IMG/VR virus record: IMGVR_UViG_3300020147_000065
Location: 157,109 to 221,108 of that record
Reading direction: 5' to 3' (one strand)
DNA length: 64,000 nucleotides
Shown here: one piece after another, positions 5,841 through 63,447 of the stretch
How the letters are laid out: each line of letters starts with the position of its first letter
Position numbering within the stretch: position 1 is the first letter of the stretch
Notes under the pieces: generated by a model
Told to the model about the DNA's origin: nothing
Seen by the model: the letters and a program-made list of their open reading frames with translations, nothing else
Database searches by the model: none
Translations under genes and position numbers: made by a program

Positions 5841-6107
5841 ATGGCTAACCACTACGAACGCAATCGGACGTTTGCTCGGTTTCAACATAACGGAAAACAC
5901 TATACCATCCACGAGCGCAAACATAAACTCAGCGATGGAACATGGCACACAAGCCGTTTTATCTGTGATGCTGCCGGAGATTGGCAAGGATGGGCAAAAG
6001 GTGTAAAGGTTGCGCGTGAAGTGTTGGATGGCAAGCGCGATAAGCATACCGGCAAACTTCTTGACCCTGTCGCCGCAATTCACGAAGCTGTAGCAGCTCT
6101 CCCATAA
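5841..6107 (+). CDS. hypothetical protein (leaderless)
   Basis: C-tract promoter. Confidence 0.7.
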   Translation: MANHYERNRTFARFQHNGKHYTIHERKHKLSDGTWHTSRFICDAAGDWQGWAKGVKVAREVLDGKRDKHTGKLLDPVAAIHEAVAALP

Positions 6108-9233: not shown

Positions 9234-9592
9234 CAAGAGTTTGGCGAGTAGAGAACTATCAAGGCTCCAGCCCGTTTGTGGAGCCTTATTTCGCTAATAA
9301 GCCACCCACGGGGTTACAGGTTGACCGACGTGATGATTTTGCTCATGTTAAAGAGTCCCTACCGTGGCGACGTGTTCGCTTCGGTATGACGACGCGTGAA
9401 AATCTCATCGAATGGTTTGGTTTCTCATTAGTGAAAGAGTTCTACAAAGAGGGTTATCGAATAGTTACCTATATTGTAGACGATAGATACGTGATGCACT
9501 CTAAGAGTCGTTATCAGTTAATGTTTGATTTAGACCACGCGAGATTAGATTATGAGGTAGAAGAAAATCAACTAATGTCAGTATGGCCTTAA
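9230..9592 (+). CDS. hypothetical protein
   Basis: ATGA overlap with the upstream gene. Confidence 0.7.
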   Translation: MTRVWRVENYQGSSPFVEPYFANKPPTGLQVDRRDDFAHVKESLPWRRVRFGMTTRENLIEWFGFSLVKEFYKEGYRIVTYIVDDRYVMHSKSRYQLMFDLDHARLDYEVEENQLMSVWP

Positions 9593-11760: not shown

Positions 11761-11812
11761 GTTTTGCCCCCCCCCCTTGCACCCTTTAAAACTTAGAGTT
11801 AGAATATATTAC

Positions 11813-12028
11813 ATGGAAACACAAGCGCCTGATTCGATTATCGTTTACCGTTCGCCAAGTGACAAGCTGATTGCCGAAACTCAATATGATATTATGATGG
11901 CAGTCGGCAACTTTTTCTGGGACAACTGGCTCGTGATTTTGGGTGGCCTCGGATTCGGAATCTTCCTTTTCGCTGTGCTGATTCCGTGGTTTCAAGACAG
12001 CGTAATTAAAGGTCGGGTTCGCCGCTAA
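11813..12028 (+). CDS. small membrane protein
   Basis: Leaderless; one transmembrane segment. Confidence 0.65.
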   Translation: METQAPDSIIVYRSPSDKLIAETQYDIMMAVGNFFWDNWLVILGGLGFGIFLFAVLIPWFQDSVIKGRVRR

Positions 12029-12099
12029 GCGGTGGGCCTTGCCCCCCCCCCTTGTGCAGCATAGTAAATTTGTTAAAATAAATAGTGAGGTTAATCATT

Positions 12100-12324
12100 A
12101 TGAAAATTGCTTCTGCTGCTCCGACAAACACTGGTGTAAATGTTCAGTTGTCCTCTCAGGTCGCCTACATTGGCCGCAATGCCAACATCGGGCGTCAGGC
12201 TAACATTGGCTGCAATGCCAACATCGGGCGTCAGGCTAACATTGGCCGCCCATTCAATGCTACCATGCAACAGGCCGCCGCGCATCGTCGCCGGATGATG
12301 CCCGTGCTGCGGCGCACGAAGTAA
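12100..12324 (+). CDS. small protein with five xANIGx hexapeptide repeats
   Basis: AYIGRNANIGRQANIGCNANIGRQANIGR; 36-nt tandem duplication at 12169-12240. Confidence 0.6.
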   Translation: MKIASAAPTNTGVNVQLSSQVAYIGRNANIGRQANIGCNANIGRQANIGRPFNATMQQAAAHRRRMMPVLRRTK

Positions 12325-13173: not shown

Positions 13174-13224
13174 GGAATTGCCCCCCCCCTTGCAGCATCT
13201 ATTATCTAATGTTATCCTTTAATC

Positions 13225-13779
13225 ATGGAAAAGAACGACATCCTCGATATTTACCACAAAGGCGCTGCTGTTGGTATTGCTACTCCGTTTTCTGAACTGC
13301 CATTAGGCCGATATTTTTATGATGGTGGACAGGAATATAAAAAGGTCAGCGATGACACCGCATTCGGTAATCATTCGCGTCGTTTCAATCCTTCTTATTT
13401 GGTTGTAATTACGTTGGTTACACCGCTATTTAACTTTCATGATGTGGATAAAGTTTATCTGGCGATGTGTGACCATTTCGGCGTGTTTTTCCACAGACAG
13501 AACACCCGCGCAGACGTTGCCCGTGCCTTAATGAATTTGCCCGTGTTGGTGGTTACTGAGGTTGTAGCATGGGCAAAGATGAAATGGGCGCAAAAGATGT
13601 TCGAGGTCGAAACTCAGCGCGGCATCGGCAACCCCGAAAAGTTGGCCGAATTACAGCAGACGTGGAGTGCGCTTTATAATGCGATTGCAGCAAAGCATTA
13701 TCCGGCGGGGCGTTTCTACTGGGTGGAGTGTCGCGGCGATATTCGCCGCATTGACCCTTCGCGTTACCGTTCGCGGTAA
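13225..13779 (+). CDS. hypothetical protein
   Basis: Leaderless module. Confidence 0.75.
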   Translation: MEKNDILDIYHKGAAVGIATPFSELPLGRYFYDGGQEYKKVSDDTAFGNHSRRFNPSYLVVITLVTPLFNFHDVDKVYLAMCDHFGVFFHRQNTRADVARALMNLPVLVVTEVVAWAKMKWAQKMFEVETQRGIGNPEKLAELQQTWSALYNAIAAKHYPAGRFYWVECRGDIRRIDPSRYRSR

Positions 13780-40727: not shown

Positions 40728-40818
40728 ACTTAGATAATACTAAATAAATGGAGATGAAGCAAGGGGGGGGGGCAGATAAGAAAAAGCCCAGCAAGGTCGG
40801 AGGCCCTTGCTGGGTGCG

Positions 40819-40943: not shown

Positions 40944-41024
40944 AATCAGCGACCTTACTACGTAGCGTTCTAAAGCAGGGAAGTTCTTGCGAGAGTTTGC
41001 AACCTCTCGTTTTTCCTGCTTAGA

Positions 41025-41417
41025 TGGAGATGTGGGTAATTGAAACCCAGTCTTGAAGTAGTAACAAAGTAGTTTATAGGCTTAGACTGTCTTTTAGTTT
41101 AGCTTTCCACGGGGCGCAGTCGTTCTAATCGTATCGGAAAGCGAGTCACTAATTCATACCGACTAATGACTGTCGTTTGGTGCTTACATTAATTACCTCT
41201 ATCTTACATCGTAAGCAATTCAGTAGAGGTTTGCTTAAACTAAATTAAGCTGCGAGACGGGCCATCTGAGCCTTAGGAGCCATAACTCCACCGAACAAAG
41301 AAACACCCTGATTAAAAACGTTGCCGTTTATAGCATGTCAGCCGTTTAAGGTGTCTGCCAACGAACACCGCCTAAATTCCTTTGATAACAAATCTTCAAT
41401 CGAAACCTGTCATCCCC
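41025..41417 (-). ncRNA. ssrA: tmRNA
   Basis: 5' GGGGATGACAGGTTTCGA; 3' T-arm plus CATCTCCA with G3:U70; tag frame 41325..41245 GNVFNQGVSLFGGVMAPKAQMARLAA*. Confidence 0.93.
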
Positions 41418-42527: not shown

Positions 42528-43026
42528 GTTATCCTTTCATCATCAGCGTAGATGCTGTAATCAATACGGCAGCAAACCAGTAGAGGGCATGAGCATAATC
42601 TTTGGCTAACAGATAACCAATGAAGCTGATGGCTTGAAGAAAGGTTATCAGCATAACCATCTTTGGTGCCCATAACGTCATAAATTCTTGCATTAGTATT
42701 TCTTCAACTCCTGAACCAAAGAGCCTTTGTCATTTTCAAGGGTGAGAATGAGATTATAACCAATAATTACATCATGAAACTCGATATGTGGAGCAGCCAG
42801 AAGTAAATTGAATACCTGATGTGCAAAAGAACCATCTTCTGTCACAAGAAGGGTAAACACTTCATCACTAATCCACTGCTTTTCAGCTTTTGCTTTGATT
42901 GTGAACATACATAGATTATACTGAATCGTGTGAGGCAGAGCAAGGGGGGGGGCAGACAAATAACTACGACCAGCCTTTTTGGGGCTGGTCGCGTTGCTCT
43001 ACCATCGAAACGATAGAGGGGTAATA

Positions 43027-47057: not shown

Positions 47058-47110
47058 GAGAAGCTAACAGCATTAAAATGATTCAGCTTATATCAAAAAC
47101 AATGCTTCTC
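47058..47110 (+). ncRNA. ACAGCAA-stem RNA copy 1
   Basis: GAGAAGC-TA-ACAGCA...GCTTCTC directly after the tRNA-Ser CCA. Confidence 0.6.
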
Positions 47111-47233: not shown

Positions 47234-47384
47234 AAGAAGCGCACAGCAATCTGCAAAATAAAGCATTTGTGTGAAAAACAAAACAATGTAGGTTCGAATC
47301 CTACCCTGCCCACCAATTAGTGGCAACTACTATCTTAGTTGTATTCAACTGGGCAGGTAGCTAAACTGGAAAACAACGCTTCTT
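47234..47384 (+). ncRNA. ACAGCAA-stem RNA copy 2 enclosing a circularly permuted tRNA-Phe(GAA)-like domain
   Basis: AAGAAGCG/CGCTTCTT stem; 3' tRNA part 47261-47315 precedes 5' part 47351-47371. Confidence 0.75.
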
Positions 47385-51093: not shown

Positions 51094-51200
51094 TCAAACT
51101 GGCAAGCAGGTGCGTTCTAAGGTATACGGGTTCAGGGTATACACTGGATGCCTATAAGGTAACTTAGAATTGGGGGTTCGAGTCTCCCAGTGCGAGGCAA

Positions 51201-51381
51201 AAGGTAGACACAGCAAACTTTTCACATTACATAAATTGCTAAACTTTTGGTGCTTAGCGCACCTCCGTGAGAGCGGGGCCTCTGAAACCAGTGTGGTGGA
51301 TGAGGGAAACAACTCCGAGGACTCGGCCTCGTTAATCCAGGGCGTAGTAACGAGCTACGATAAAAGCGGAAAAGCTACCTT
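51201..51381 (+). ncRNA. ACAGCAA-stem RNA copy 3 (multi-hairpin cargo)
   Basis: AAGGTAG-AC-ACAGCAA...CTACCTT; follows a T-arm-bearing element at 51101-51199. Confidence 0.6.
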
Positions 51382-51817: not shown

Positions 51818-51889
51818 GCGCTTGTAGTTCAGTGGTAGAACACCGACTTCTAGATTCGGGTGTGGCGGGTTCGAATCCTGCCGAGCGCA
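51818..51889 (+). tRNA. amber suppressor tRNA (CTA)
   Basis: CCGAC-TTCTAGA-TTCGG arm in a canonical body. Confidence 0.7.
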
Positions 51890-52020
51890 CTTCATCTTAA
51901 TTAAGGAGCCTACAATGAGCAAGTAGATTGACTTCATGTAGCTGTGTTCAAATAAATCACCACCCGTGGTTAGCCAGATTTCACAAACAACTGACTGACA
52001 ACAAACGGAGATTTAATACA

Positions 52021-53326: not shown

Positions 53327-53330
53327 ATTC

Positions 53331-53420
53331 GGAGAGTAACTCAGCCAGGGTTGCTGAACTTGTTTGCTAAACATGTGGCTCGTCTTAAAAACGGGTGAGG
53401 TTCAAGTCCTCTGCTCTCCA
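53331..53420 (+). tRNA. tRNA-Ser(GCT)
   Basis: TTGCTAA loop, variable arm. Confidence 0.78.
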
Positions 53421-55774: not shown

Positions 55775-56503
55775 TTAGATGGCGAGAGATGTTAAGGCAT
55801 CTCTCGCCTCTTCTGGTGTAGAAAATCCGGTCTTTGCGTATCTTATTCCGTTAATTTTCTTTGCATATAACCATTTATCTCTCTTGTTATAATACACATT
55901 CGGATAAACATGTTGCTTTTTAACAGGAAGAGAAAAACCATCTTTTATTTCTTTCATGTAATTTTCTCGATTACTTGGAAAATTTAATCTTGCTTCTTTA
56001 CCGTAAAGTAATAGTGCTAATTTATCATAATGTTCTGCGGCTTCTTCCTCTGATAAGAAATCACAACGATAATATTCTTTTCCGTTTTTATCTCTTATAA
56101 ATGCTCTCCATTTTTCACTGGATGCATTATGTAAACAAACCCCCACATATCTTTTATTTGAGTTTTTCTTTACTCCTTGTTGACTGGTGGTAGAATTACC
56201 AAAACGAACATCTGCTGGGTTTCTAATTAAGTTATATCCGAATCTTCTGTCCCAAGACTTTAGCTCATTTATCCAGAAATACTCTCTGTCTTTTGCTTTA
56301 TCAAAATCTACAGTTTCTATAGGCTCAATCATAAAATTGTTTATACCATGAGAAGCCATTGCTTTATGTATAATTGTCTTAGCTCTATGACGAGCAAAAC
56401 TTTTGTGACCATTAAATCTAATATTAATTGGTTGGGTTGTTGAACCAATATAAATTTTCCCATTGAGTAGATTTGTGATCTTGTAGATATTGATCTGTTT
56501 CAT
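55775..56503 (-). CDS. GIY-YIG homing endonuclease with AP2 domains
   Basis: IYKITNLLNGKIYIGST; YVGV...WRAFI...EEEAAEHYD...LNFP. Confidence 0.9.
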   Translation of the reverse strand: MKQINIYKITNLLNGKIYIGSTTQPINIRFNGHKSFARHRAKTIIHKAMASHGINNFMIEPIETVDFDKAKDREYFWINELKSWDRRFGYNLIRNPADVRFGNSTTSQQGVKKNSNKRYVGVCLHNASSEKWRAFIRDKNGKEYYRCDFLSEEEAAEHYDKLALLLYGKEARLNFPSNRENYMKEIKDGFSLPVKKQHVYPNVYYNKRDKWLYAKKINGIRYAKTGFSTPEEARDALTSLAI

Positions 56504-56573: not shown

Positions 56574-57887
56574 ATGCCACAAATAATTGATGAAGCGCGT
56601 CTGATATGTGCTAAATTCAAAGACGGGAAGTTAGTACATAATAAATTTTACAACATGACATTATACGACGACAACCGAGTGCGAATTTGGTATGGGCGAT
56701 ATGTTGAGGATGGCAGCGGTGGACTGAAAACACAGAGCGACGAAACGGTTCCTGGCGGTCGCGCTTTGTTTGATTCAAAATATCGTGAAAAGACCGGCCC
56801 AAGAAAAGGTTACAAGCCGCTCCCAGTCGTAGCGAACACAACTTCAGATAGTAAAATAGTTGTGGCTAAAGGCACACTTGCTGAGATTGCAGCAAAGCAA
56901 ATCAAGACTAACTCCGATGAAGTGTTTATGCTTATCAAACATCTCGCAGATGTTAATGTGCATCAAATTACTTCACAAACCTCTATCAAGTATGACGCAG
57001 CAACGGGTAGCTTTTCAACACCTTATGGTCTTGTTACTTCTAATGGTATTGATAAGGGGCGGACACTTTTAGGTGAGATTCATAGTCTGCTAACCACGGG
57101 CACCTTCGATAAGCGTTTTGAGACACTTGTTGAAGAATATATGACAATCATTCCACAAAGTGTTGGTCGCCGTTCAATCGGCCCGAAAGAAGTCTTTCCT
57201 AATCTTGATAAAGTCAAGTCACAAAACGACGTGCTTGATGCTCTTGAAGCATCTTTAACCGAGGCCAATAAACCTAAGAAGGAAGAAAAGAGCGACGAAG
57301 CGCAGGAAGTTGAGAAGTTGTTCGACTGCGTATTAGAGATTGTCACAGACCCCGCAGAATATAACCGCGTGGAAAGCCTTTATACTTCTTCTCGTAAAGA
57401 AATGCACGTAGCAGCACGTTTAAAACTACGTAAGGTTTACCGTGTTGTTATTAACCACATGACGCAAGCCTACAATAACCGTAAGGTTAAAGGTAATGAG
57501 CAAGAGTTATGGCATGGAACATCACCGGCTAACGTGCTTTCGATTCTTAAATCAGGCTTCATGATTTCGCCGCCTTCAACGGCGGCAATCGCGGGTAAAA
57601 ACTTTGGTTACGGTGTTTATTTCGCTAATGCCTCAACCAAGAGTTTAAACTACGCACACGGTTATTGGTCAGGCACTTATGCTCGGAAATGCTTCTTGTT
57701 TTTAAACAACGTGGCTCTTGGTAACTATTATGTTCCTGAGAACACCACGCGAAGCAATCCACCAAAAGGCTACGATTCATACTGGGCACAGGCGGGTAAA
57801 TCCTCCTGGTTACAGAATGATGAGATTGTGATTTTCGACACAACTCAGATTGAGCCTACTTACTTGCTGGAATTTGAGGACAACTAA
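56574..57887 (+). CDS. PARP-like ADP-ribosyltransferase (WGR + helical + catalytic)
   Basis: NKFY..WYGR; LWHGT; FGYGVYFA; NDEIVIF (H-Y-E triad). Confidence 0.92.
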   Translation: MPQIIDEARLICAKFKDGKLVHNKFYNMTLYDDNRVRIWYGRYVEDGSGGLKTQSDETVPGGRALFDSKYREKTGPRKGYKPLPVVANTTSDSKIVVAKGTLAEIAAKQIKTNSDEVFMLIKHLADVNVHQITSQTSIKYDAATGSFSTPYGLVTSNGIDKGRTLLGEIHSLLTTGTFDKRFETLVEEYMTIIPQSVGRRSIGPKEVFPNLDKVKSQNDVLDALEASLTEANKPKKEEKSDEAQEVEKLFDCVLEIVTDPAEYNRVESLYTSSRKEMHVAARLKLRKVYRVVINHMTQAYNNRKVKGNEQELWHGTSPANVLSILKSGFMISPPSTAAIAGKNFGYGVYFANASTKSLNYAHGYWSGTYARKCFLFLNNVALGNYYVPENTTRSNPPKGYDSYWAQAGKSSWLQNDEIVIFDTTQIEPTYLLEFEDN

Positions 57888-57952: not shown

Positions 57953-59077
57953 ATGAGCACAGAATATCACCATCCAGACGACAAAGCACTTATGGATTTA
58001 CAGGCAGGGGAAATCAAGATTATCAAACCTGATGAACCTCCCTTCTTAGTTGAACTCGATGAACTTGAAAGAGCAGCCGAACCCTTCTTTTTCGATATGA
58101 AATTCATCTTTCCTTACCAACATCACTTGAATGATGTTGAGGGACATATATTAGGGATTCAATACGATGGAGTTACCATTGCAAAATTCCAACAAGTTCA
58201 TGGTGGATTCTTTCGCCTCGCATGGACTAACGACCAACGACAGGAAGATATTCCGTGGGAAGTTCACGGTCTTTGTGTTGGCTGTGTAATCAGTTTCGAC
58301 CAACTTCTATTTGCAGTGAAATGGGCTTCATTCGCTAACAAATTGAAGTATAAACGCGGAACACGTTTCCTTAGTGATGGTGACGTGAAAAATCAATTAA
58401 ATAATCCAGAAAAGGGGTTGACACCACCCACGGAAAGTGGTAAAATAAATGGTGTTAAAGGAGAAAATATGTGTTTGGTAAATCCTCTGCAAAATGATGT
58501 GCAGACAGTTGTGAACGAGTTTGTTTCTCAGGGTAAATCTTTTACCGCTTTCGATGTGACCGTAGAAGTAGGCAACCGTGTAGGAATGAAGGTGCCTCAT
58601 CGCTACGTGAAGCCAGAGGTTGTCAATGCTCTGGAAACGCTACCCACGGGGTATGATGTGCGAATCCGCACCGACATTAACGGACAACCGCGCGAGTGGT
58701 ATAAGACGCAACCGGCAGCAGTAGCTACTCCGGCAACCGCTGCTGTTAAAGCGCCCGTGGCAAGCACAAATGTTGGTGTCGCAAAGAATGAAGATGGCAC
58801 TCGCCTTCGCGTTTTTCGTGACGCCCTTGAATCCGTTGGCTTCAAACCAGGTGAGAAAGTTCGTGCTGTATTCTCGCCTTCCATGAAAGCAGTATTTGTC
58901 ATTCCGACAACTTCTGTGTTTTCAACCAATGACCCTGACAAGAAGGATGCAGAGTATTCTGTGGACGTTCGACAGAATCTTCGCCTTCAACTGTCAACAC
59001 TTGGAATCCCTTCTGCCTCACAGGTAAGCGGTGTTTCTAAGGTTCAAGATAAAGTTTTGCAAATTTCTTTGCAATAA
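57953..59077 (+). CDS. hypothetical protein; probable internal gene start at 58469
   Basis: Internal TTGACA/TAAAAT promoter at ~58418 and AAGGAG RBS in frame. Confidence 0.65.
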   Translation: MSTEYHHPDDKALMDLQAGEIKIIKPDEPPFLVELDELERAAEPFFFDMKFIFPYQHHLNDVEGHILGIQYDGVTIAKFQQVHGGFFRLAWTNDQRQEDIPWEVHGLCVGCVISFDQLLFAVKWASFANKLKYKRGTRFLSDGDVKNQLNNPEKGLTPPTESGKINGVKGENMCLVNPLQNDVQTVVNEFVSQGKSFTAFDVTVEVGNRVGMKVPHRYVKPEVVNALETLPTGYDVRIRTDINGQPREWYKTQPAAVATPATAAVKAPVASTNVGVAKNEDGTRLRVFRDALESVGFKPGEKVRAVFSPSMKAVFVIPTTSVFSTNDPDKKDAEYSVDVRQNLRLQLSTLGIPSASQVSGVSKVQDKVLQISLQ

Positions 59078-59141
59078 CCCCTTGACAAACTTGCAGGAAC
59101 CACGTATAATATCTTACGTGCTAATGCATACATGATAAAAA

Positions 59142-59215
59142 GCTAAGACGTATGCGACAGGTAAAGCAGCTAAAAGCGGTGTGTTTTGCGGGTTCGATTC
59201 CCGCCGTCTTAGTCA
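59142..59215 (+). ncRNA. tRNA-like unit lacking a normal anticodon arm
   Basis: CTAAGACG/CGTCTTAG acceptor-like stem plus GCGGG-TTCGATT-CCCGC T-arm. Confidence 0.55.
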
Positions 59216-59216
59216 T

Positions 59217-59279
59217 AAGGTTCTAACAGCAAACAATCAAAATTGTTTACCATTTAATCAAACAAATCAAATGAACCTT
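59217..59279 (+). ncRNA. ACAGCAA-stem RNA copy 4
   Basis: AAGGTTC-TA-ACAGCAA...GAACCTT. Confidence 0.7.
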
Positions 59280-59285
59280 GAATTT

Positions 59286-59353
59286 AGGGGAGTAGCTCAC
59301 CGTTAGAGCGTCCGTCTGGAAGGTAGCAGGTTAAATTCCTGCCTCCCCTACCA
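59286..59353 (+). ncRNA. tRNA-like unit with truncated anticodon arm and CCA end
   Basis: AGGGGAG/CTCCCCT-ACCA; D and T arms intact; anticodon arm only TCC-GTCT-GGA. Confidence 0.7.
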
Positions 59354-59354
59354 A

Positions 59355-59455
59355 AAGATAGTTACAGCAATCTTTACAGCATAGCTTAATGGATAAGCAA
59401 AAGTCTTCAAAACTTTAGATTGCGGGTTCGACTCCCGCTGCAATAAAACTATCTT
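59355..59455 (+). ncRNA. ACAGCAA-stem RNA copy 5 carrying an acceptor-less tRNA(UCA) mimic
   Basis: AAGATAGTT/AACTATCTT stem; D-arm, AAAGT-CTTCAAA-ACTTT and T-arm inside. Confidence 0.75.
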
Positions 59456-59461
59456 GTAAAT

Positions 59462-59542
59462 TGGGATGAAGTTCTGAGGTGTTCGGAATATAGGCTCTCC
59501 GCGGAGTCGAAGGGGTAGGTTAAACTCCTACCGTCCCAGCCA
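59462..59542 (+). ncRNA. tRNA-like unit with 6-nt anticodon loop and CCA end
   Basis: TGGGATG/CGTCCCA-GCCA; GGCTC-TCCGCG-GAGTC. Confidence 0.6.
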
Positions 59543-59543
59543 A

Positions 59544-59613
59544 AAGGTCGAGACAGCAACTTAAAACGCATTTCACTGTTAATGAACGACGACGGGTTCG
59601 ACTCCCCTTACCA
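59544..59613 (+). ncRNA. ACAGCAA RNA copy 6 with the 3' part of a tRNA-Asn(GTT)-like unit
   Basis: AAGGTCG-AG-ACAGCAA, TTCA-CTGTTAA-TGAA, GGG-TTCGACT-CCC, ACCA; closing strand not found. Confidence 0.5.
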
Positions 59614-59665
59614 CCCCTTGACAACCCCCCGCGGTTAGTAGTATAATTACTTTGGTTTTGAAAGA

Positions 59666-59699
59666 AAGGTGCGAACAACAACAATACCAATAGCACCTT
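59666..59699 (+). promoter_or_regulatory. ACA(A)CAA-stem copy 7 in the 5' UTR, abutting the RBS of the DUF2828 gene
   Basis: AAGGTGC-GA-ACAACAA...GCACCTT-GGAGG-AATTATG. Confidence 0.65.
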
Positions 59700-59708
59700 G
59701 GAGGAATT

Positions 59709-61190
59709 ATGGCACGAATGAATAGCCTTGTGGCTGCGCTCAACACGACTGTAACTGAGAAGGGCGCTCTCACCAACCGCTCAAGCGGTTCTGCAATGTT
59801 GGATTTCTACGGACAGATGGGCGCTATGCGCGGTCAGTCTGACTCCAACGTAAACTCTACGTTCTCCGCGGCTTTTGCTGCTGAGCGAGCACTTGCTCTC
59901 CGTTCTCTCTTCTATCTCCGTGACGTTCGCGGTGGTAAGGGTGAGCGAAAGACCTTCCGCACCATCCTTGATTGGTTGGTAAAGAATGACCCACAGGTTG
60001 TAATCAATAACCTCGATAACATCTCGTTCTATGGTCGTTACGACGACCTTGCCCGTTTGATTAACTGCGGAAACACTAAGGTGAAGAACGCAGTGGTCGC
60101 AAAGGTCAAGGCTCAGCTTGCGGCTGACAAGAACGACGAACACCCTTCGCTCTTGGCTAAGTGGATGCCCTCCATTAACGCCTCGTCCACAGAGTCTAAG
60201 TCTCTGGCGAAGAAGTGGATTCGTGCTCTCGGTATGTCCGAGGCCGAATATCGTAAGACTCTTTCTGCGCTTCGTGCTCAGATTAAGGTTGTCGAGCGTT
60301 ATATGTGCGCCCGTGATTGGGATTCGATTAACTTCGAGCACGTCCCATCGAACGCTGCAAAGCTGTATCGTAAGGCGTTTAAGACCCGCGCACCTGAGCG
60401 TTACTCTGAGTATCTCGGTGCCGTAGAGAAGGGTGAGAAGACCATCAAGGCTTCTACTCTTTACCCCTACGACCTCGTTCGTCCTTACTTGAAGGCCGGT
60501 GGCTATTACGGTGGACGTGTAAGCGTTGACCGCACTATCGAAGCACAGTGGAAGGCTCTGCCTAACTACCTCGCTGACGATGACACCGACTTCTTGGTAA
60601 TCGCGGACACTTCGGGTTCGATGTTCGACCACTCGTTGGATTTCTTGCCCATCTGCGTATCAGTGTCTTTGGCACTATACTCGGCTGAGCGTAACCGTGG
60701 AGCCTTCAAGGGCTTCTGGATGAACTTCTCAACTTCTCCTACTTTCCAGCAGGTTCGTGGTGAGACTTTGGCTGACAAGATTAGCAACATGGACTACTCT
60801 AACTGGTGTGGTTCTACCAACGTTGACAAGGCTTTCGAGTTGATTCTTTCTCGCGCTCGCGCGGCGAATGTTCCAGCCGACGAAATGCCTAAGATGTTGA
60901 TGGTCATTAGTGATATGCAGTTTGACGGTCACTGCACCGTGACGAACCTTGAGACTTGGAAGAAGAAGTTCGCAACCTACGGTTACGAGGCTCCAACCAT
61001 CGTCTTCTGGAACGTAAACGCACGTCCTGGCCAGTCGCCAATTACTGTAAACGACAAGGGTGTAATGCTTGTTAGCGGTGCGTCCGCAGAGACATTCCGC
61101 GCTGTCCTTTCCGGTAAGAACTTGTCGGCTTACGACGCAATGGTTAATACTCTCAGCAATGAGCGTTACGACCGTGTTGTTGTAGACTAA
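59709..61190 (+). CDS. DUF2828 / TROVE-like vWA domain protein (Ro60-like architecture)
   Basis: TEKGA..SSG..LDF; LFYLRDVRGGKGER; LAKWMPS; LYPYDLV; ADTSGSM; SDMQFD; FWNV. Confidence 0.9.
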   Translation: MARMNSLVAALNTTVTEKGALTNRSSGSAMLDFYGQMGAMRGQSDSNVNSTFSAAFAAERALALRSLFYLRDVRGGKGERKTFRTILDWLVKNDPQVVINNLDNISFYGRYDDLARLINCGNTKVKNAVVAKVKAQLAADKNDEHPSLLAKWMPSINASSTESKSLAKKWIRALGMSEAEYRKTLSALRAQIKVVERYMCARDWDSINFEHVPSNAAKLYRKAFKTRAPERYSEYLGAVEKGEKTIKASTLYPYDLVRPYLKAGGYYGGRVSVDRTIEAQWKALPNYLADDDTDFLVIADTSGSMFDHSLDFLPICVSVSLALYSAERNRGAFKGFWMNFSTSPTFQQVRGETLADKISNMDYSNWCGSTNVDKAFELILSRARAANVPADEMPKMLMVISDMQFDGHCTVTNLETWKKKFATYGYEAPTIVFWNVNARPGQSPITVNDKGVMLVSGASAETFRAVLSGKNLSAYDAMVNTLSNERYDRVVVD

Positions 61191-61207
61191 TCCGGTGTTG
61201 GGCGGGG

Positions 61208-61242
61208 AAAGGGGCAGCTTTCGGGCTGCCCCTTTTCTTTTT
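61208..61242 (+). terminator. intrinsic terminator
   Basis: GGGGCAGC-TTTCGG-GCTGCCCC followed by a T-tract. Confidence 0.8.
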
Positions 61243-62871: not shown

Positions 62872-63447
62872 ATGACACACATCACAAAAGACGTTAATGG
62901 ACTTCCTTTCACTGTTGTTCATGCTTCTGCTCTCGATATTCCTGCTGACTCTATAGTAAACGCGGCCAATTCTGGTCTAAGAGCCGGTAGCGGTATCTGT
63001 GGGGCGATTTATAAAGCCGCAGGTGCCGAAATCCTGAATCGTTATGTCCAAACTCGATTCCCTAATGGGAGTAATACCGGACAATCTGTTATTACCCCTG
63101 CTTTTGGACTTCAAAATCACAGGCGTATTATCCACTCTGTCGGCCCACGATACGATGACCATACTCCACAGGAAGCGGCGCATTATCTGACAATGGCTTA
63201 TTCCTCTGCTATCTATGCTGCTAATTTGGTTGGTAATTCCGTAACGTTCTGTGGGCTATCCACGGGGATTTACGGATACCCTCTTGATGAAGCCGCGTGG
63301 GTTGCTATAAACACTGTAGCCTCACACCTTTATGGTATTGGCTCAAATATGGTTGTGAACTTTGCTCTATTTCAACCAGAAGAGTATCAGGCTTTTGCTA
63401 CTGCTCTCATAAACTGTCAATTTGGTGGGATTACAAGTAATGCCTGA
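62872..63447 (+). CDS. macrodomain ADP-ribose hydrolase
   Basis: IVNAANSGL..GSGICGAIYKAAG; IIHSVGP; LSTGIYGYP. Confidence 0.93.
   Translation: MTHITKDVNGLPFTVVHASALDIPADSIVNAANSGLRAGSGICGAIYKAAGAEILNRYVQTRFPNGSNTGQSVITPAFGLQNHRRIIHSVGPRYDDHTPQEAAHYLTMAYSSAIYAANLVGNSVTFCGLSTGIYGYPLDEAAWVAINTVASHLYGIGSNMVVNFALFQPEEYQAFATALINCQFGGITSNA

What the first reader, a model, noticed from the sequence alone, without database searches (positions are those of the whole stretch)
59142..59613. Alternating array of anticodon-defective tRNA shells and ACAGCAA RNAs
Seen: three tRNA-like units (59142, 59286, 59462) keep acceptor and T arms, two with an encoded CCA, but have missing, 4-nt or 6-nt anticodon loops. 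Each is followed immediately by an ACAGCAA element, downstream of a TTGACA/TATAAT promoter at ~59082. Inference: the shells work as RNase P/3'-processing punctuation that cuts one precursor into separate small RNAs, rather than as decoders.
Basis: partly seen in the sequence, partly recalled or inferred. Interest (0 to 1): 0.78.

Follow-up and report, generated by a model that had tools for sequence, protein, structure and literature searches.

The report
Y-RNA-like array beside phage Ro-like gene
A giant phage carries, just upstream of a Ro60-like RNA-binding protein gene, a row of small hairpin RNAs (motif ACAGCAA) interleaved with tRNA look-alikes that cannot decode. The hairpins belong to a large phage RNA family I could not find described, which is probably that protein's partner RNA and closely resembles an orphan RNA class of social amoebae.

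Summary
Window 59142-59612 holds three tRNA-shaped units with intact acceptor and T arms and crippled anticodon arms. Each is followed within 1-3 nt by a hairpin of the form AAG-stem, 1-3 nt, ACAGCAA, variable loop, stem-CUUG.

The ACAGCAA hairpin is a large RNA family absent from Rfam 15. A covariance model gave 112 hits, all on the gene strand, in 870 kb around 80 phage DUF2828 genes. It gave none at the same cut-off (E<=0.01) in 291 kb of control DNA or in the T4 tRNA region. Salmonella phage Felix O1 carries four copies.

Hits cluster beside the DUF2828/DUF7788 gene, which follows the array here (59709-61190). Its model matches Ro60 (TROVE+vWA) over its full length. Many members carry a tRNA-like domain, either nested (YrlA-like) or as a tRNA body with the module in the anticodon position.

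Best reading: an operon of Y-RNA-like partner RNAs of a Ro60-like protein, with the shells as its tRNA-mimic parts. Cutting by RNase P at shell boundaries is plausible but untested, and punctuation alone is too narrow. The family matches Dictyostelium Class I RNAs feature for feature.

The parts
59082..59110 (+). Promoter P1 (TTGACA-17-TATAAT) at the head of the RNA array
   Evidence: 12 of 12 consensus matches. No terminator-like site before 61204.
59142..59215 (+). Shell U1: tRNA-like unit with acceptor helix, D-like arm and canonical T arm. The anticodon arm is replaced by an A-rich mini-hairpin and there is no CCA (GUCA).
   Evidence: Not called by ARAGORN.
59216..59280 (+). Hairpin A: ACAGCAA RNA, simple type (8-bp closing stem, ACAGCAA at 59226-59232)
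   Evidence: Model R1 47.2 bits, E 1.9e-6. Fold. Its 18-nt 5' part is identical in L003. Rfam Dicty_Class_I_RNA 16.3 bits.
59286..59353 (+). Shell U2: cloverleaf with a 3 bp + 4 nt anticodon arm and encoded ACCA
   Evidence: Rfam tRNA 47.1 bits with a truncated anticodon arm. The minimum-energy fold is the cloverleaf, z = -2.5.
59355..59455 (+). Hairpin B: ACAGCAA RNA whose 9-bp closing stem (59355-59363 with 59447-59455) encloses a whole tRNA
   Evidence: z = -2.6. ACAGCAA at 59364-59370.
59375..59446 (+). tRNA(UCA) nested inside hairpin B. It has a canonical 7-nt anticodon loop, 1-2 acceptor mismatches and no CCA. It is either an opal-suppressor tRNA or the tRNA-like module of RNA B.
   Evidence: 60.8 bits.
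59462..59542 (+). Shell U3: cloverleaf with a 4- or 6-nt anticodon loop and encoded GCCA
   Evidence: No tRNA call.
59543..59610 (+). Hairpin C: divergent or truncated ACAGCAA element (motif at 59553-59559, T-loop-like GGGTTCGACTCCC inside, closing helix imperfect)
   Evidence: R1 13.8 bits, E 2.7. Fold not better than shuffles.
59618..59647 (+). Promoter P2 (TTGACA-18-TATAAT) in front of the protein gene. It is conserved in L002.
59666..59699 (+). Mini-hairpin of the same design in the 5' UTR (ACAACAA variant). Its 3' arm runs straight into the Shine-Dalgarno GGAGGA (59700-59705). Candidate autoregulatory site.
   Evidence: R1 20.4 bits, E 0.16. Fold z = -2.4. Equivalent elements in L002, L003, L185 and others.
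59709..61190 (+). Gene for a DUF2828 + DUF7788 protein with a Ro60-like fold (TROVE-type helical domain plus vWA)
   Evidence: Pfam. AlphaFold model pLDDT 80. Best PDB and Swiss-Prot matches are Ro60 proteins, E about 1e-7, TM 0.45-0.57.
61204..61239 (+). Strong intrinsic terminator that closes the unit
   Evidence: 16-bp stem followed by a T run.
47058..47110 (+). Further family member (ACAGCAT variant) directly after tRNA-Ser
   Evidence: R1 29.8 bits, E 0.003..
47234..47384 (+). Further member directly after tRNA-Asp. The closing stem and ACAGCAA enclose a circularly permuted tRNA-like domain (T arm, loop-closed acceptor helix, U8A9 plus D region), which is the YrlA architecture.
   Evidence: Partial Rfam tRNA hit at 47253-47304.
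51096..51381 (+). tRNA-like element (about 51096-51198) followed by a long ACAGCAA RNA (51201-51381, 7-bp closing stem, structured interior)

Best explanation
The region is the RNA part of an operon that runs P1, small RNAs, (P2), Ro60-like protein gene, terminator.

The ACAGCAA hairpins are the phage counterpart of Y RNAs. Their conserved unit is a helix closed by invariant A-U and G-C pairs (5' NAG..., 3' ...CUN'G), followed 1-3 nt later by single-stranded ACAGCAA. I infer that this unit is the binding site of the DUF2828/DUF7788 protein encoded next to them.

As in bacterial YrlA, the family is built from two modules, a protein-binding module and a tRNA mimic. Across phages the two are joined in four ways:
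- a hairpin alone;
- a tRNA-like domain (permuted or not) inside the hairpin loop;
- a tRNA body with the module in place of the anticodon arm;
- in this phage and in L003, an acceptor-closed, non-decoding tRNA shell placed immediately 5' of a free-standing hairpin.

Inferred steps: host RNase P cuts 5' of each shell, and tRNA 3'-end maturation cuts after the (R)CCA. This releases shells of about 65-80 nt and hairpin RNAs of about 65-105 nt. The hairpins load onto the Ro60-like protein. The UTR mini-hairpin, which overlaps the Shine-Dalgarno sequence, lets the protein repress its own translation.

The biological role of the particle is unknown. By analogy with Ro60/Y RNA, and given the setting (35 tRNAs, a tmRNA, PARP-like and Macro genes), it probably serves tRNA or small-RNA surveillance or repair during infection.

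Shown here: the anatomy, family membership, stem covariation, gene linkage and the protein fold. Inferred: binding, processing, autoregulation and role.
For: Family and structure:
- In 80 loci around phage DUF2828 genes, ACAGCAA occurs 220 times in non-coding DNA on the gene strand (17.4 expected) and 11 times on the other strand.
- 125 of those 220 have a closing stem of at least 7 bp, against 82 of 1100 after shuffling.
- In an alignment of 90 simple hairpins the stem pairs covary. Examples: AU 35, UA 33, GC 8 at one pair; AU 54, GC 27 at another. The covariation score is 0.533 against 0.212 in shuffles, reached by 0 of 500 shuffles.
- Model R1 gives 112 hits at E<=0.01 in 870 kb, all on the gene strand.
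- At the same cut-off it gives none in 291 kb of unrelated viral DNA, and no hit at all up to E 10 in 18 kb around the T4 tRNA cluster.

Linkage to the gene:
- 59 of 167 motifs lie within 500 nt upstream of the gene, and 19 lie within 500 nt after it.
- 62 of 80 loci have at least one hairpin.
- The closer relatives L185 and L186 have hairpin arrays directly upstream of the gene under one promoter.
- Felix O1 has four hairpins right after its gene.
- A hairpin of the same design abuts the Shine-Dalgarno sequence of the gene in the window and in L002, L003, L185 and others.

Protein:
- The fold matches Ro60 over the full length.
- One Atlas cluster carries both the DUF2828 and the TROVE Pfam hits.
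- Phage annotators call homologues 'Ro-like RNA binding protein'.

tRNA-like modules as integral parts:
- Permuted, nested tRNA-like domains occur at window 47234-47384, L116 5336-5460, L117 7077-7201, L107, L060, L074, L185 and Felix O1 9442-9566.
- tRNA bodies carrying the module in the anticodon position occur in about ten loci.

Shells under constraint:
- The same kinds of defect are seen in L003.
Against: - There is no expression or end-mapping data for this phage or any relative. No RNA run holding the array was listed.
- Protein-RNA binding is inferred from genetic linkage only.
- The nearest DUF2828 relative (L002, 73% identical) has no array in the 590 nt upstream of its gene, so the array is not obligatorily adjacent.
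- 18 of the 80 loci show no hairpin within +/-5 kb.
- Hairpin C lacks a convincing closing stem.
- Orthology of the shells between the window and L003 rests on shared structural oddities. Sequence identity is uninformative, about 70% for every pairing.
- The rows of alignment A2 were chosen with a stem filter, so its percentage of paired cells is inflated. One search is the unbiased test.
- The Rfam YrlA model does not recognise these RNAs (17-19 bits against a threshold of 69).
Confidence: 0.6

Rival explanations
1. Pure punctuation. The shells have no role of their own. They only recruit RNase P and the tRNA 3'-end enzymes, so that one transcript is cut into separate ACAGCAA RNAs.
For: - The shells keep exactly the RNase P determinants and lose the decoding part.
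- The linkers are short: 1-3 nt after CCA and 5-6 nt before the next shell.
- In other phages genuine tRNAs directly precede hairpins, 24 cases.
- A Y RNA with a 7-bp acceptor stem is cut by RNase P (PMC4201824).
Against: - 31 hairpins follow another hairpin and 94 follow neither a tRNA nor a hairpin, so the family does not need tRNA punctuation.
- tRNA-like bodies are covalently built into many members, in two circularly permuted forms. This points to a function for the tRNA shape itself.
- D arms, which RNase P does not need, are also kept in U2, U3 and their L003 counterparts.
Confidence: 0.2
2. Decoys. The shells are stand-alone tRNA mimics that soak up or mislead host factors recognising the acceptor/T-arm side of tRNA (defence nucleases, modifying toxins). 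They act independently of the Ro60-like protein. Their position next to the hairpins only reflects a shared tRNA-type operon.
For: - The phage invests heavily in tRNA supply: 35 tRNAs and a tmRNA.
- The shells keep an L-shape-compatible fold and a CCA end.
Against: - No defence-related partner was identified.
- The systematic physical fusion of tRNA-like domains to the ACAGCAA module in other phages argues for joint function.
Confidence: 0.1
3. The hairpins act at the DNA level or only in cis. They could be homing-endonuclease or mobile-element sites, tRNA trailer or terminator structures, or a leader that regulates the DUF2828 gene, rather than free RNAs.
For: - Homing endonuclease genes sit in these tRNA clusters (window 55775-56503; three HNH genes in Felix O1).
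- Many hairpins lie in the leader of the gene, and one overlaps its Shine-Dalgarno sequence.
Against: - Strand specificity is absolute (112 of 112 hits), and the compensatory changes preserve RNA pairing, including G-U.
- Members also lie downstream of the gene and kilobases away inside tRNA clusters.
- No T run follows the stems.
Confidence: 0.07
4. Decay. The shells are dying tRNA genes and the ACAGCAA copies are chance or relics.
For: The ACAGCAA count in the whole window is at chance level. Hairpin C looks degenerate.
Against: - L003 keeps perfectly paired acceptor and T stems with entirely different sequences, and shows the same kinds of anticodon-arm defect.
- The family-wide statistics argue against chance.
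Confidence: 0.03

Closest known systems
Ro60 (Rsr) with YrlA-type Y RNAs of bacteria and cluster C mycobacteriophages (Chen et al. 2014, PMC4201824; Rfam RF02553)
   Same: - A ring-type TROVE + vWA protein gene has several small RNAs on the same strand within a few kb.
- The RNAs are built from a terminal stem with a short conserved motif plus a tRNA-like domain: T arm, loop-closed acceptor helix and D arm, in permuted order.
- At least some are RNase P substrates.
   Different: - The protein belongs to another sequence family (DUF2828/DUF7788). It gets no Pfam TROVE hit and is about 13% identical to Ro60 in the structural alignments.
- The RNA motif is AAG-helix plus ACAGCAA, not GNCGAAN0-1G.
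- The YrlA model scores only 17-19 bits.
- Most members are short hairpins without a tRNA domain, in tandem arrays or interleaved with tRNAs.
- Additional topologies exist: the module inside a tRNA body, and free shells.
Class I RNAs of dictyostelid social amoebae (Rfam RF01414; Kjellin et al. 2021, PMC7919456)
   Same: - Length is about 42-65 nt.
[quoted passage not shown]
- Conserved 5' (A)AG and 3' CUG flank the stem.
- ACAGCAA lies 2-3 nt after the 5' stem strand. Hairpins A and B match 9 of the 11 motif positions, including all five invariant ones.
- The loop is variable and A/U-rich, and is A-rich before the 3' stem.
- The Rfam model gives eight matches on the phage hairpins, five of them spanning the full model.
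   Different: - Class I RNAs are eukaryotic, with their own DUSE promoter, and were reported as unique to Dictyostelia.
- Their known direct binder is an RRM protein (Rnp1A/CIBP).
- All scores here (16-24 bits) are below the curated threshold of 41.5.
- No tRNA-like modules have been described for them.
- A DUF2828 protein in Dictyostelium was not verified here.
Phage T4 species 1 and 2 RNAs (rnaC, rnaD)
   Same: They are stable small RNAs encoded at the end of a phage tRNA cluster (record annotation). From my own knowledge, not checked here: they are released from the tRNA precursor by the tRNA-processing enzymes, and their function is still unknown.
   Different: They have no ACAGCAA hairpin: R1 gives no hit up to E 10 and the Class I model gives none. 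No DUF2828 homologue of T4 appeared among the phage hits shown.
tRNA-like processing signals of non-coding RNAs: mascRNA of MALAT1, and the tRNA-miRNA units (TMERs) of murine gammaherpesvirus 68. This comparison rests on my own knowledge and was not tested here.
   Same: tRNA-shaped elements that do not decode mark where RNase P or RNase Z cut a longer transcript.
   Different: They occur in eukaryotic or herpesviral settings. There the tRNA-like part is not combined with a Ro-type protein-binding module.

Membership tests
tRNA (Rfam RF00005) | Score at or above the curated threshold (29 bits) on the tRNA covariance model | tested here: inconclusive
   U2 scores 47.1 bits. For U1 only the T arm is matched (17 bits). 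U3 has no match up to E 10. ARAGORN calls none of the three.
tRNA (Rfam RF00005) | 5-bp anticodon stem with a 7-nt loop (U33, anticodon, R37) | tested here: not met
   U1 has no such arm. U2 has 3 bp + 4 nt. U3 has a 4- or 6-nt loop. The nested tRNA(UCA) does meet this feature.
YrlA / bacterial Y RNA (Rfam RF02553) | Score at or above the curated threshold (69 bits) | tested here: not met
   17.4 bits on the window and 19.4 bits on L057. No YrlA match at threshold in 13 DUF2828 loci, 132 kb.
YrlA / bacterial Y RNA (Rfam RF02553) | GNCGAAN0-1G motif near the 5' end, in the Ro60-binding stem (PMC4201824) | tested here: not met
   The consensus of 90 hairpins is NAGRCRC-NN-ACAGCAA, with no such motif.
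YrlA / bacterial Y RNA (Rfam RF02553) | Encoded within a few kb of a Ro60-type (TROVE + vWA) gene, on the same strand | tested here: met
   Met at the level of fold. The protein model matches Ro60. 112 of 112 model hits are on the gene strand and are concentrated within 500 nt of the gene.
YrlA / bacterial Y RNA (Rfam RF02553) | tRNA-like domain (T arm, loop-closed acceptor helix, D arm) enclosed by the terminal stem | tested here: inconclusive
   Present in some members: window 47234-47384, Felix O1 9442-9566, L116, L117, L185. It is absent from most members, and in the array under study the tRNA-like units stand beside the hairpins, not inside them.
Y RNA (functional definition) | Physically bound by the Ro60-type protein | not testable with these tools
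   This needs immunoprecipitation or gel-shift assays.
Dictyostelium Class I RNA (Rfam RF01414) | Score at or above the curated threshold (41.5 bits) | tested here: not met
   Eight matches of 16-24 bits on the hairpins in four loci, five of them spanning the full model. None in a T4 control of the same size.
Dictyostelium Class I RNA (Rfam RF01414) | Short stem joining the 5' and 3' ends, 5' AAG, 3' CUG(U), 11-nt motif CCUUACAGCAA next to the 5' strand, about 60 nt in length | tested here: met
   Phage consensus: N-A-G stem, 1-3 nt, ACAGCAA, then stem C-U-N-G. Median length 66 nt. Hairpins A and B match 9 of 11 motif positions, including T3, C6, C9, A10 and A11. Felix O1 copies read AAG...CUGG.
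Dictyostelium Class I RNA (Rfam RF01414) | Dictyostelid gene with a DUSE promoter, expressed as an abundant cytoplasmic RNA | tested here: not met
   These are phage sequences behind sigma-70-type promoters. Their expression is unknown.
TROVE / Ro60 protein family (Pfam PF05731) | Match to the TROVE profile | tested here: not met
   No TROVE hit up to E 10; only DUF2828 and DUF7788. No Ro60 chain by sequence profile against PDB.
TROVE / Ro60 protein family (Pfam PF05731) | Ro60 fold: helical-repeat ring domain followed by a vWA domain | tested here: met
   Foldseek probability 1.00, E 1e-7 to 3e-6, TM 0.43-0.57, aligned over about 460 of 493 residues to 9kop, 9l5y, 2nvo, 1yvp and to Ro60 of five species.

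The most novel reading that the evidence does not exclude
The phage ACAGCAA hairpins and the Class I RNAs of Dictyostelium are one RNA family, and its members are the cognate ligands of DUF2828/DUF7788 proteins. These proteins form a second Ro60-like lineage, found in hundreds of phages and in many eukaryotes. If so, this is a second Ro/Y-type ribonucleoprotein system that spans viruses and eukaryotes. It would give the orphan Class I RNAs a protein partner and an evolutionary origin. [quoted passage not shown]
Probability: 0.35. Interest if true: 0.92.

Novelty: new variant of a known kind. Interest (0 to 1): 0.82.

Why it matters
- DUF2828/DUF7788 proteins are encoded by at least 704 sequenced phages, including Felix O1, Listeria A511-like phages, cluster L mycobacteriophages, Campylobacter, Vibrio and Bacillus phages, and by many eukaryotes. 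No RNA partner is known for them.
- This finding supplies a candidate partner. It has a simple, testable recognition element and a ready experimental system in Felix O1 on laboratory Salmonella.
- It extends the link between Ro60/Y RNA particles and tRNA mimicry to a second protein lineage.
- The same two RNA modules are joined in four different ways. That is a natural experiment on which connections matter.
- It explains many of the unannotated gaps in phage tRNA clusters.
- It raises a concrete hypothesis for Dictyostelium Class I RNAs. These are abundant, developmentally regulated, conserved for some 600 million years and mechanistically unexplained.

Tried and rejected
1. DNA similarity to known phages found nothing. 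The window is IMG/VR contig 3300020147_000065 itself.
2. An exact 16-mer shared with L003 was scanned in viral contigs. It gave 33 loci; all except the window itself were chance matches in coding DNA, as expected for a 16-mer.
3. A gapped junction pattern (T loop, CCA, CAGCAA) was scanned.
 - In viral contigs it found one real extra locus, L038. Its contig is the same length as Aeromonas phage LAh_8, which does encode DUF2828.
 - In metagenomes it gave 65 loci, mostly chance. About six were real tRNA+hairpin junctions. None was a further relative of this array.
4. RNA evidence. No RNA run held the array. The one run labelled RNA covered only a conserved piece of the protein gene and is probably DNA.
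5. The idea that the units are one long YrlA spanning two shells was dropped, because each shell closes its own 7-bp acceptor stem.
6. T4 rnaC and rnaD were tested as homologues. Neither model gave a match.
7. Sequence-level orthology of the shells between the window and L003 is uninformative.
8. Sequence-profile search of PDB and Pfam for TROVE found nothing. Only the fold comparison shows the relationship.
9. I tried to find out whether Dictyostelium has a DUF2828 protein, or whether DDB_G0281243 is one. The AlphaFold cluster search hides organisms. No Dictyostelium entry is among the Swiss-Prot matches. The motif and accession searches of the paper's supplements and the accession search of the paper library found nothing. 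This stays unresolved.
10. Literature searches for DUF2828, Ro-like phage proteins and the motif found no description of these RNAs.
Full report
**Setting.** The window is part of a 221-kb phage contig from a soil metagenome (IMG/VR 3300020147_000065). It has no DNA-level relative among 50,697 phage records. It carries 35 tRNA genes and a tmRNA between about 38 and 53 kb. The finding lies in the 630-nt gap between an ORF without Pfam hits (57953-59077) and a DUF2828+DUF7788 gene (59709-61190). A PARP-like gene lies upstream and a Macro-domain gene downstream.

**The observation.**
- A perfect sigma-70-type promoter sits at 59082-59110. A second one sits at 59618-59647, in front of the protein gene. 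The first terminator-like site follows that gene at 61204-61239.
- Three units have 7-bp acceptor helices and canonical T arms but abnormal anticodon arms.
- U1 (59142-59215) has an A-rich mini-hairpin in place of the anticodon arm and no CCA.
- U2 (59286-59353) folds as a cloverleaf with a 3 bp + 4 nt arm and ends in ACCA. Rfam's tRNA model accepts it at 47 bits, with 11 model positions replaced by 4 nt.
- U3 (59462-59542) has a 4- or 6-nt loop and ends in GCCA.
- ARAGORN calls none of the three.
- ACAGCAA follows each unit by 11-14 nt. Over the whole window the heptamer count is at chance level, but five of the seven plus-strand copies sit at the same distance after a tRNA or tRNA-like 3' end.

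- Each ACAGCAA element is a closed hairpin. A 5' arm begins with AAG 1-3 nt after the CCA. It pairs with a 3' arm ending in CUUG, 5-6 nt before the next unit.
- The second hairpin (59355-59455) encloses a complete tRNA with anticodon UCA (60.8 bits).
- The third hairpin has only an imperfect helix and no thermodynamic support.
- Further members follow tRNA-Ser (47058-47110), tRNA-Asp (47234-47384) and a tRNA-like element (51201-51381).

**Relatives.**
- The DUF2828 protein has thousands of homologues.
- The 73%-identical relative L002 keeps the second promoter and the leader but has another gene upstream and no array.
- The 53%-identical relative L003 has a comparable array: four tRNA-like units, each followed by a hairpin of the same design. 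Its first hairpin shares 18 identical nucleotides with hairpin A.
- The L003 units show the same kinds of defect. One has an A-rich mini-hairpin. One has a 6-nt loop, which ARAGORN reads as a two-base anticodon. One has a 4-nt loop. One has a 7-nt loop lacking U33 and R37.
- Their acceptor and T stems differ in sequence from those of the window but are fully paired. This argues against simple decay. Strict one-to-one orthology cannot be shown from sequence.

**The hairpin is a large family.** I fetched 80 loci around DUF2828 genes from viral contigs.
- In their non-coding DNA, ACAGCAA occurs 220 times on the gene strand against 17 expected, and 11 times on the other strand.
- 57% of the gene-strand copies have a closing stem of at least 7 bp, against 7.5% after shuffling the downstream sequence.
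- The copies pile up within 500 nt upstream of the gene (59 of 167) and just downstream of it.
- Ninety simple members align to NAGRCRC, 1-3 nt, ACAGCAA, an A/U-rich loop, then GYGYCUN'G. The CAGCA core is invariant, and the final A of the motif and the basal A-U and G-C pairs nearly so. The other pairs covary freely. Those rows were picked with a stem filter, so one search is the unbiased test.
- A covariance model built from the alignment (R1) finds 112 matches at E<=0.01 in 870 kb, every one on the gene strand.
- At the same cut-off it finds none in 291 kb of unrelated viral loci, and nothing at all up to E 10 in 18 kb around the T4 tRNA cluster.
- No Rfam 15 family reaches its threshold on these RNAs.

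**Cultured phages.**
- tblastn finds DUF2828 homologues in 704 phage records.
- In Salmonella phage Felix O1 the gene heads the tRNA cluster. Four hairpins lie between the first tRNAs (locus L119 8734-8800, 8901-8958, 9355-9422, 9442-9566). All start AGAAGACC and end GGUCUGG.
- Closer metagenomic relatives (L185, L186) have three or four hairpins between a promoter and the gene. In L185 the last hairpin abuts the ribosome-binding site.

**tRNA-like domains belong to the family.**
- Of 173 hairpins, 33 contain a T-loop motif.
- In many of these the loop holds a T arm, an acceptor helix closed by a loop, U8A9 and a D arm. This is the circularly permuted arrangement known from YrlA. Examples are window 47234-47384, Felix O1 9442-9566, L116 5336-5460, L117, L107, L060, L074 and L185.
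- In others an ordinary, unpermuted tRNA sits in the loop: window hairpin B, L116 4671-4786 and L100 7370-7481.
- In about ten loci the arrangement is the reverse. A tRNA body of 112-130 nt, with normal ends, carries in place of its anticodon stem-loop a local helix (nnnUCUU-tetraloop-AAGAnnn) followed by ACAGCAA.
- That form is the circular permutation of the nested form. What is conserved is therefore the helix plus single-stranded ACAGCAA, joined to a tRNA shape.
- The tandem 'shell then hairpin' layout of the window and L003 is a fourth way of combining the same two modules.
- Overall, 24 hairpins directly follow a genuine tRNA, 24 follow a T-loop element that ARAGORN does not call, 31 follow another hairpin and 94 follow none of these.

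**The protein.**
- Sequence profiles do not connect it to TROVE.
- The AlphaFold model (pLDDT 80) has Ro60 proteins as its best PDB matches, over the full length. They include the Ro60 of Thermus phage phiLo, Deinococcus Rsr and Xenopus Ro, with E about 1e-7 and TM 0.45-0.57.
- Its best Swiss-Prot matches are Ro60 of five species and telomerase p80.
- One Atlas cluster carries both DUF2828 and TROVE profile hits.
- Actinophage annotators already label homologues 'Ro-like RNA binding protein'.

**Interpretation.** The locus is best read as a Ro60-like protein gene together with its Y-RNA-like partners.
- The conserved helix plus ACAGCAA is the likely protein-binding site.
- A miniature hairpin of the same design lies in the leader of the gene. 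Its 3' arm runs into the Shine-Dalgarno sequence (window 59666-59699; also L002, L003, L185 and several others). This fits translational autoregulation by the same protein. It is the most direct sequence hint of binding, but it is an inference.
- The shells are the tRNA-mimic modules of this system.
- Cleavage at their borders is likely. They keep the RNase P determinants. Genuine tRNAs occupy the same position in other phages. A Y RNA with a 7-bp acceptor stem is an RNase P substrate (PMC4201824).
It is not a general requirement of the family, and it probably is not the only role of the shells.
- No RNA data exist to test it.

**Resemblance to Dictyostelium Class I RNAs.**
- The only non-tRNA Rfam family that repeatedly matched the hairpins was RF01414: eight matches of 16-24 bits in four loci, five of them spanning the full model. 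A T4 control of the same size gave none.
- The reported E-values of about 0.1-9 (about 1 on Felix O1) are multiplied by 4227 families. For this one family, tested afterwards on Felix O1 and L057, the five full-model matches correspond to about 1e-4 to 1e-3; the weakest partial match is about 2e-3.
- The published definition fits point for point. It specifies 42-65 nt, a 6-bp terminal stem that varies by compensatory change, conserved 5' AAG and 3' CUGU, and the motif CCUUACAGCAA next to the 5' strand with T3, C6, C9, A10 and A11 invariant (PMC7919456). The curated D. discoideum sequences read GUUGAC-CUU-ACAGCAA...GUCAAC-UG.
- All scores are below the curated threshold, so I do not file the phage RNAs as Class I RNAs.
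- The authors found the class nowhere outside Dictyostelia, and only an RRM protein is known to bind it directly. A protein of unknown function, DDB_G0281243, was also pulled down (preprint 10.1101/2020.04.05.026054).
- DUF2828 proteins occur in several eukaryotic phyla. I could not establish whether Dictyostelium has one.

**Novelty and verdict.**
- The kind of system, a Ro60-type protein with tRNA-mimicking partner RNAs, is known.
- Four things appear undescribed in Rfam 15 and in the searchable literature: this protein lineage's RNA family, its recognition motif, its four topologies, and the shell-plus-hairpin arrays.
- I rate it a new variant of a known kind.
- It is of high interest because it is widespread, easy to test in Felix O1, and may explain an orphan eukaryotic RNA class.

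Noticed in passing
window 59375-59446: A tRNA with anticodon UCA (opal-suppressor type) has a canonical anticodon loop, 1-2 acceptor mismatches and no CCA. It sits entirely inside the closing stem of an ACAGCAA hairpin. Whole tRNAs are nested in the same way in L116 4671-4786, L100 7370-7481 and L156. It is unclear whether it decodes UGA or is only the tRNA-like module.
   Followed up: partly
window 51818-51890; L108/L109 about 1680-1755: A tRNA with anticodon CUA (amber-suppressor type; ARAGORN labels it 'Pyl'). In L108 and L109 such a tRNA is directly followed by a hairpin. Together with tRNA(UCA), this hints at stop-codon suppression or recoding in these phages.
   Followed up: no
window 59666-59705; L002 about 541-590; L003 about 5929-5980; L185 553-612: A mini ACAGCAA-type hairpin lies in the 5' UTR of the DUF2828 gene. 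Its 3' CUUG or CUAG runs straight into the Shine-Dalgarno sequence. This is a candidate site for translational autoregulation.
   Followed up: partly
window about 40740-40800 (-), about 42950-43010 (-), about 53330-53360 (+), about 13180-13230 (+); L003 5545-5600: A run of 8-14 C followed by TTGC or TTGAC and a -10-like box recurs after tRNA genes and before genes, in the window and in L003. It looks like a phage-specific promoter class with a poly-C upstream element.
   Followed up: no
window 56574-57887 and 62872-63447; L003 1737-3035: A PARP-like gene (WGR, PARP regulatory and catalytic domains) and a Macro-domain gene flank the locus. The PARP-like gene also lies upstream of the array in L003. 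This may point to an ADP-ribosylation theme linked to the RNA system.
   Followed up: no
L044 8172-8460, L049 6662-6950, L054 5271-5392, L057 4013-4145, L066 6581-6696 and 6983-7100, L069 6533-6648, L075 6963-7080, L076 4618-4738, L083 3293-3420, L100 4438-4564: tRNA-shaped RNAs of 112-130 nt in which the anticodon stem-loop is replaced by a tetraloop-closed helix plus ACAGCAA. Rfam scores them as tRNAs with a long insertion. They could be mis-annotated as intron-containing tRNAs.
   Followed up: partly
window 41022-41417 (-): A phage-encoded tmRNA (89 bits). L003 also has one (11783-12190).
   Followed up: no
window 55775-56503 (-): A GIY-YIG plus AP2-domain homing-endonuclease-like gene lies just upstream of the PARP-like gene. 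Felix O1 has three HNH endonuclease genes inside its tRNA cluster.
   Followed up: no
L187 8909-9172 (-) (phage T4 rnaC, rnaD): T4's stable species 1 RNA carries a T-arm-like CCGGGTTCGAATCCCGG near its 3' end, but it matches neither the R1 model nor the Class I model. It is a different kind of small RNA from a tRNA operon.
   Followed up: partly
L066 10063-10159: A wcaG RNA motif (67 bits, above threshold) lies in a DUF2828 phage locus.
   Followed up: no
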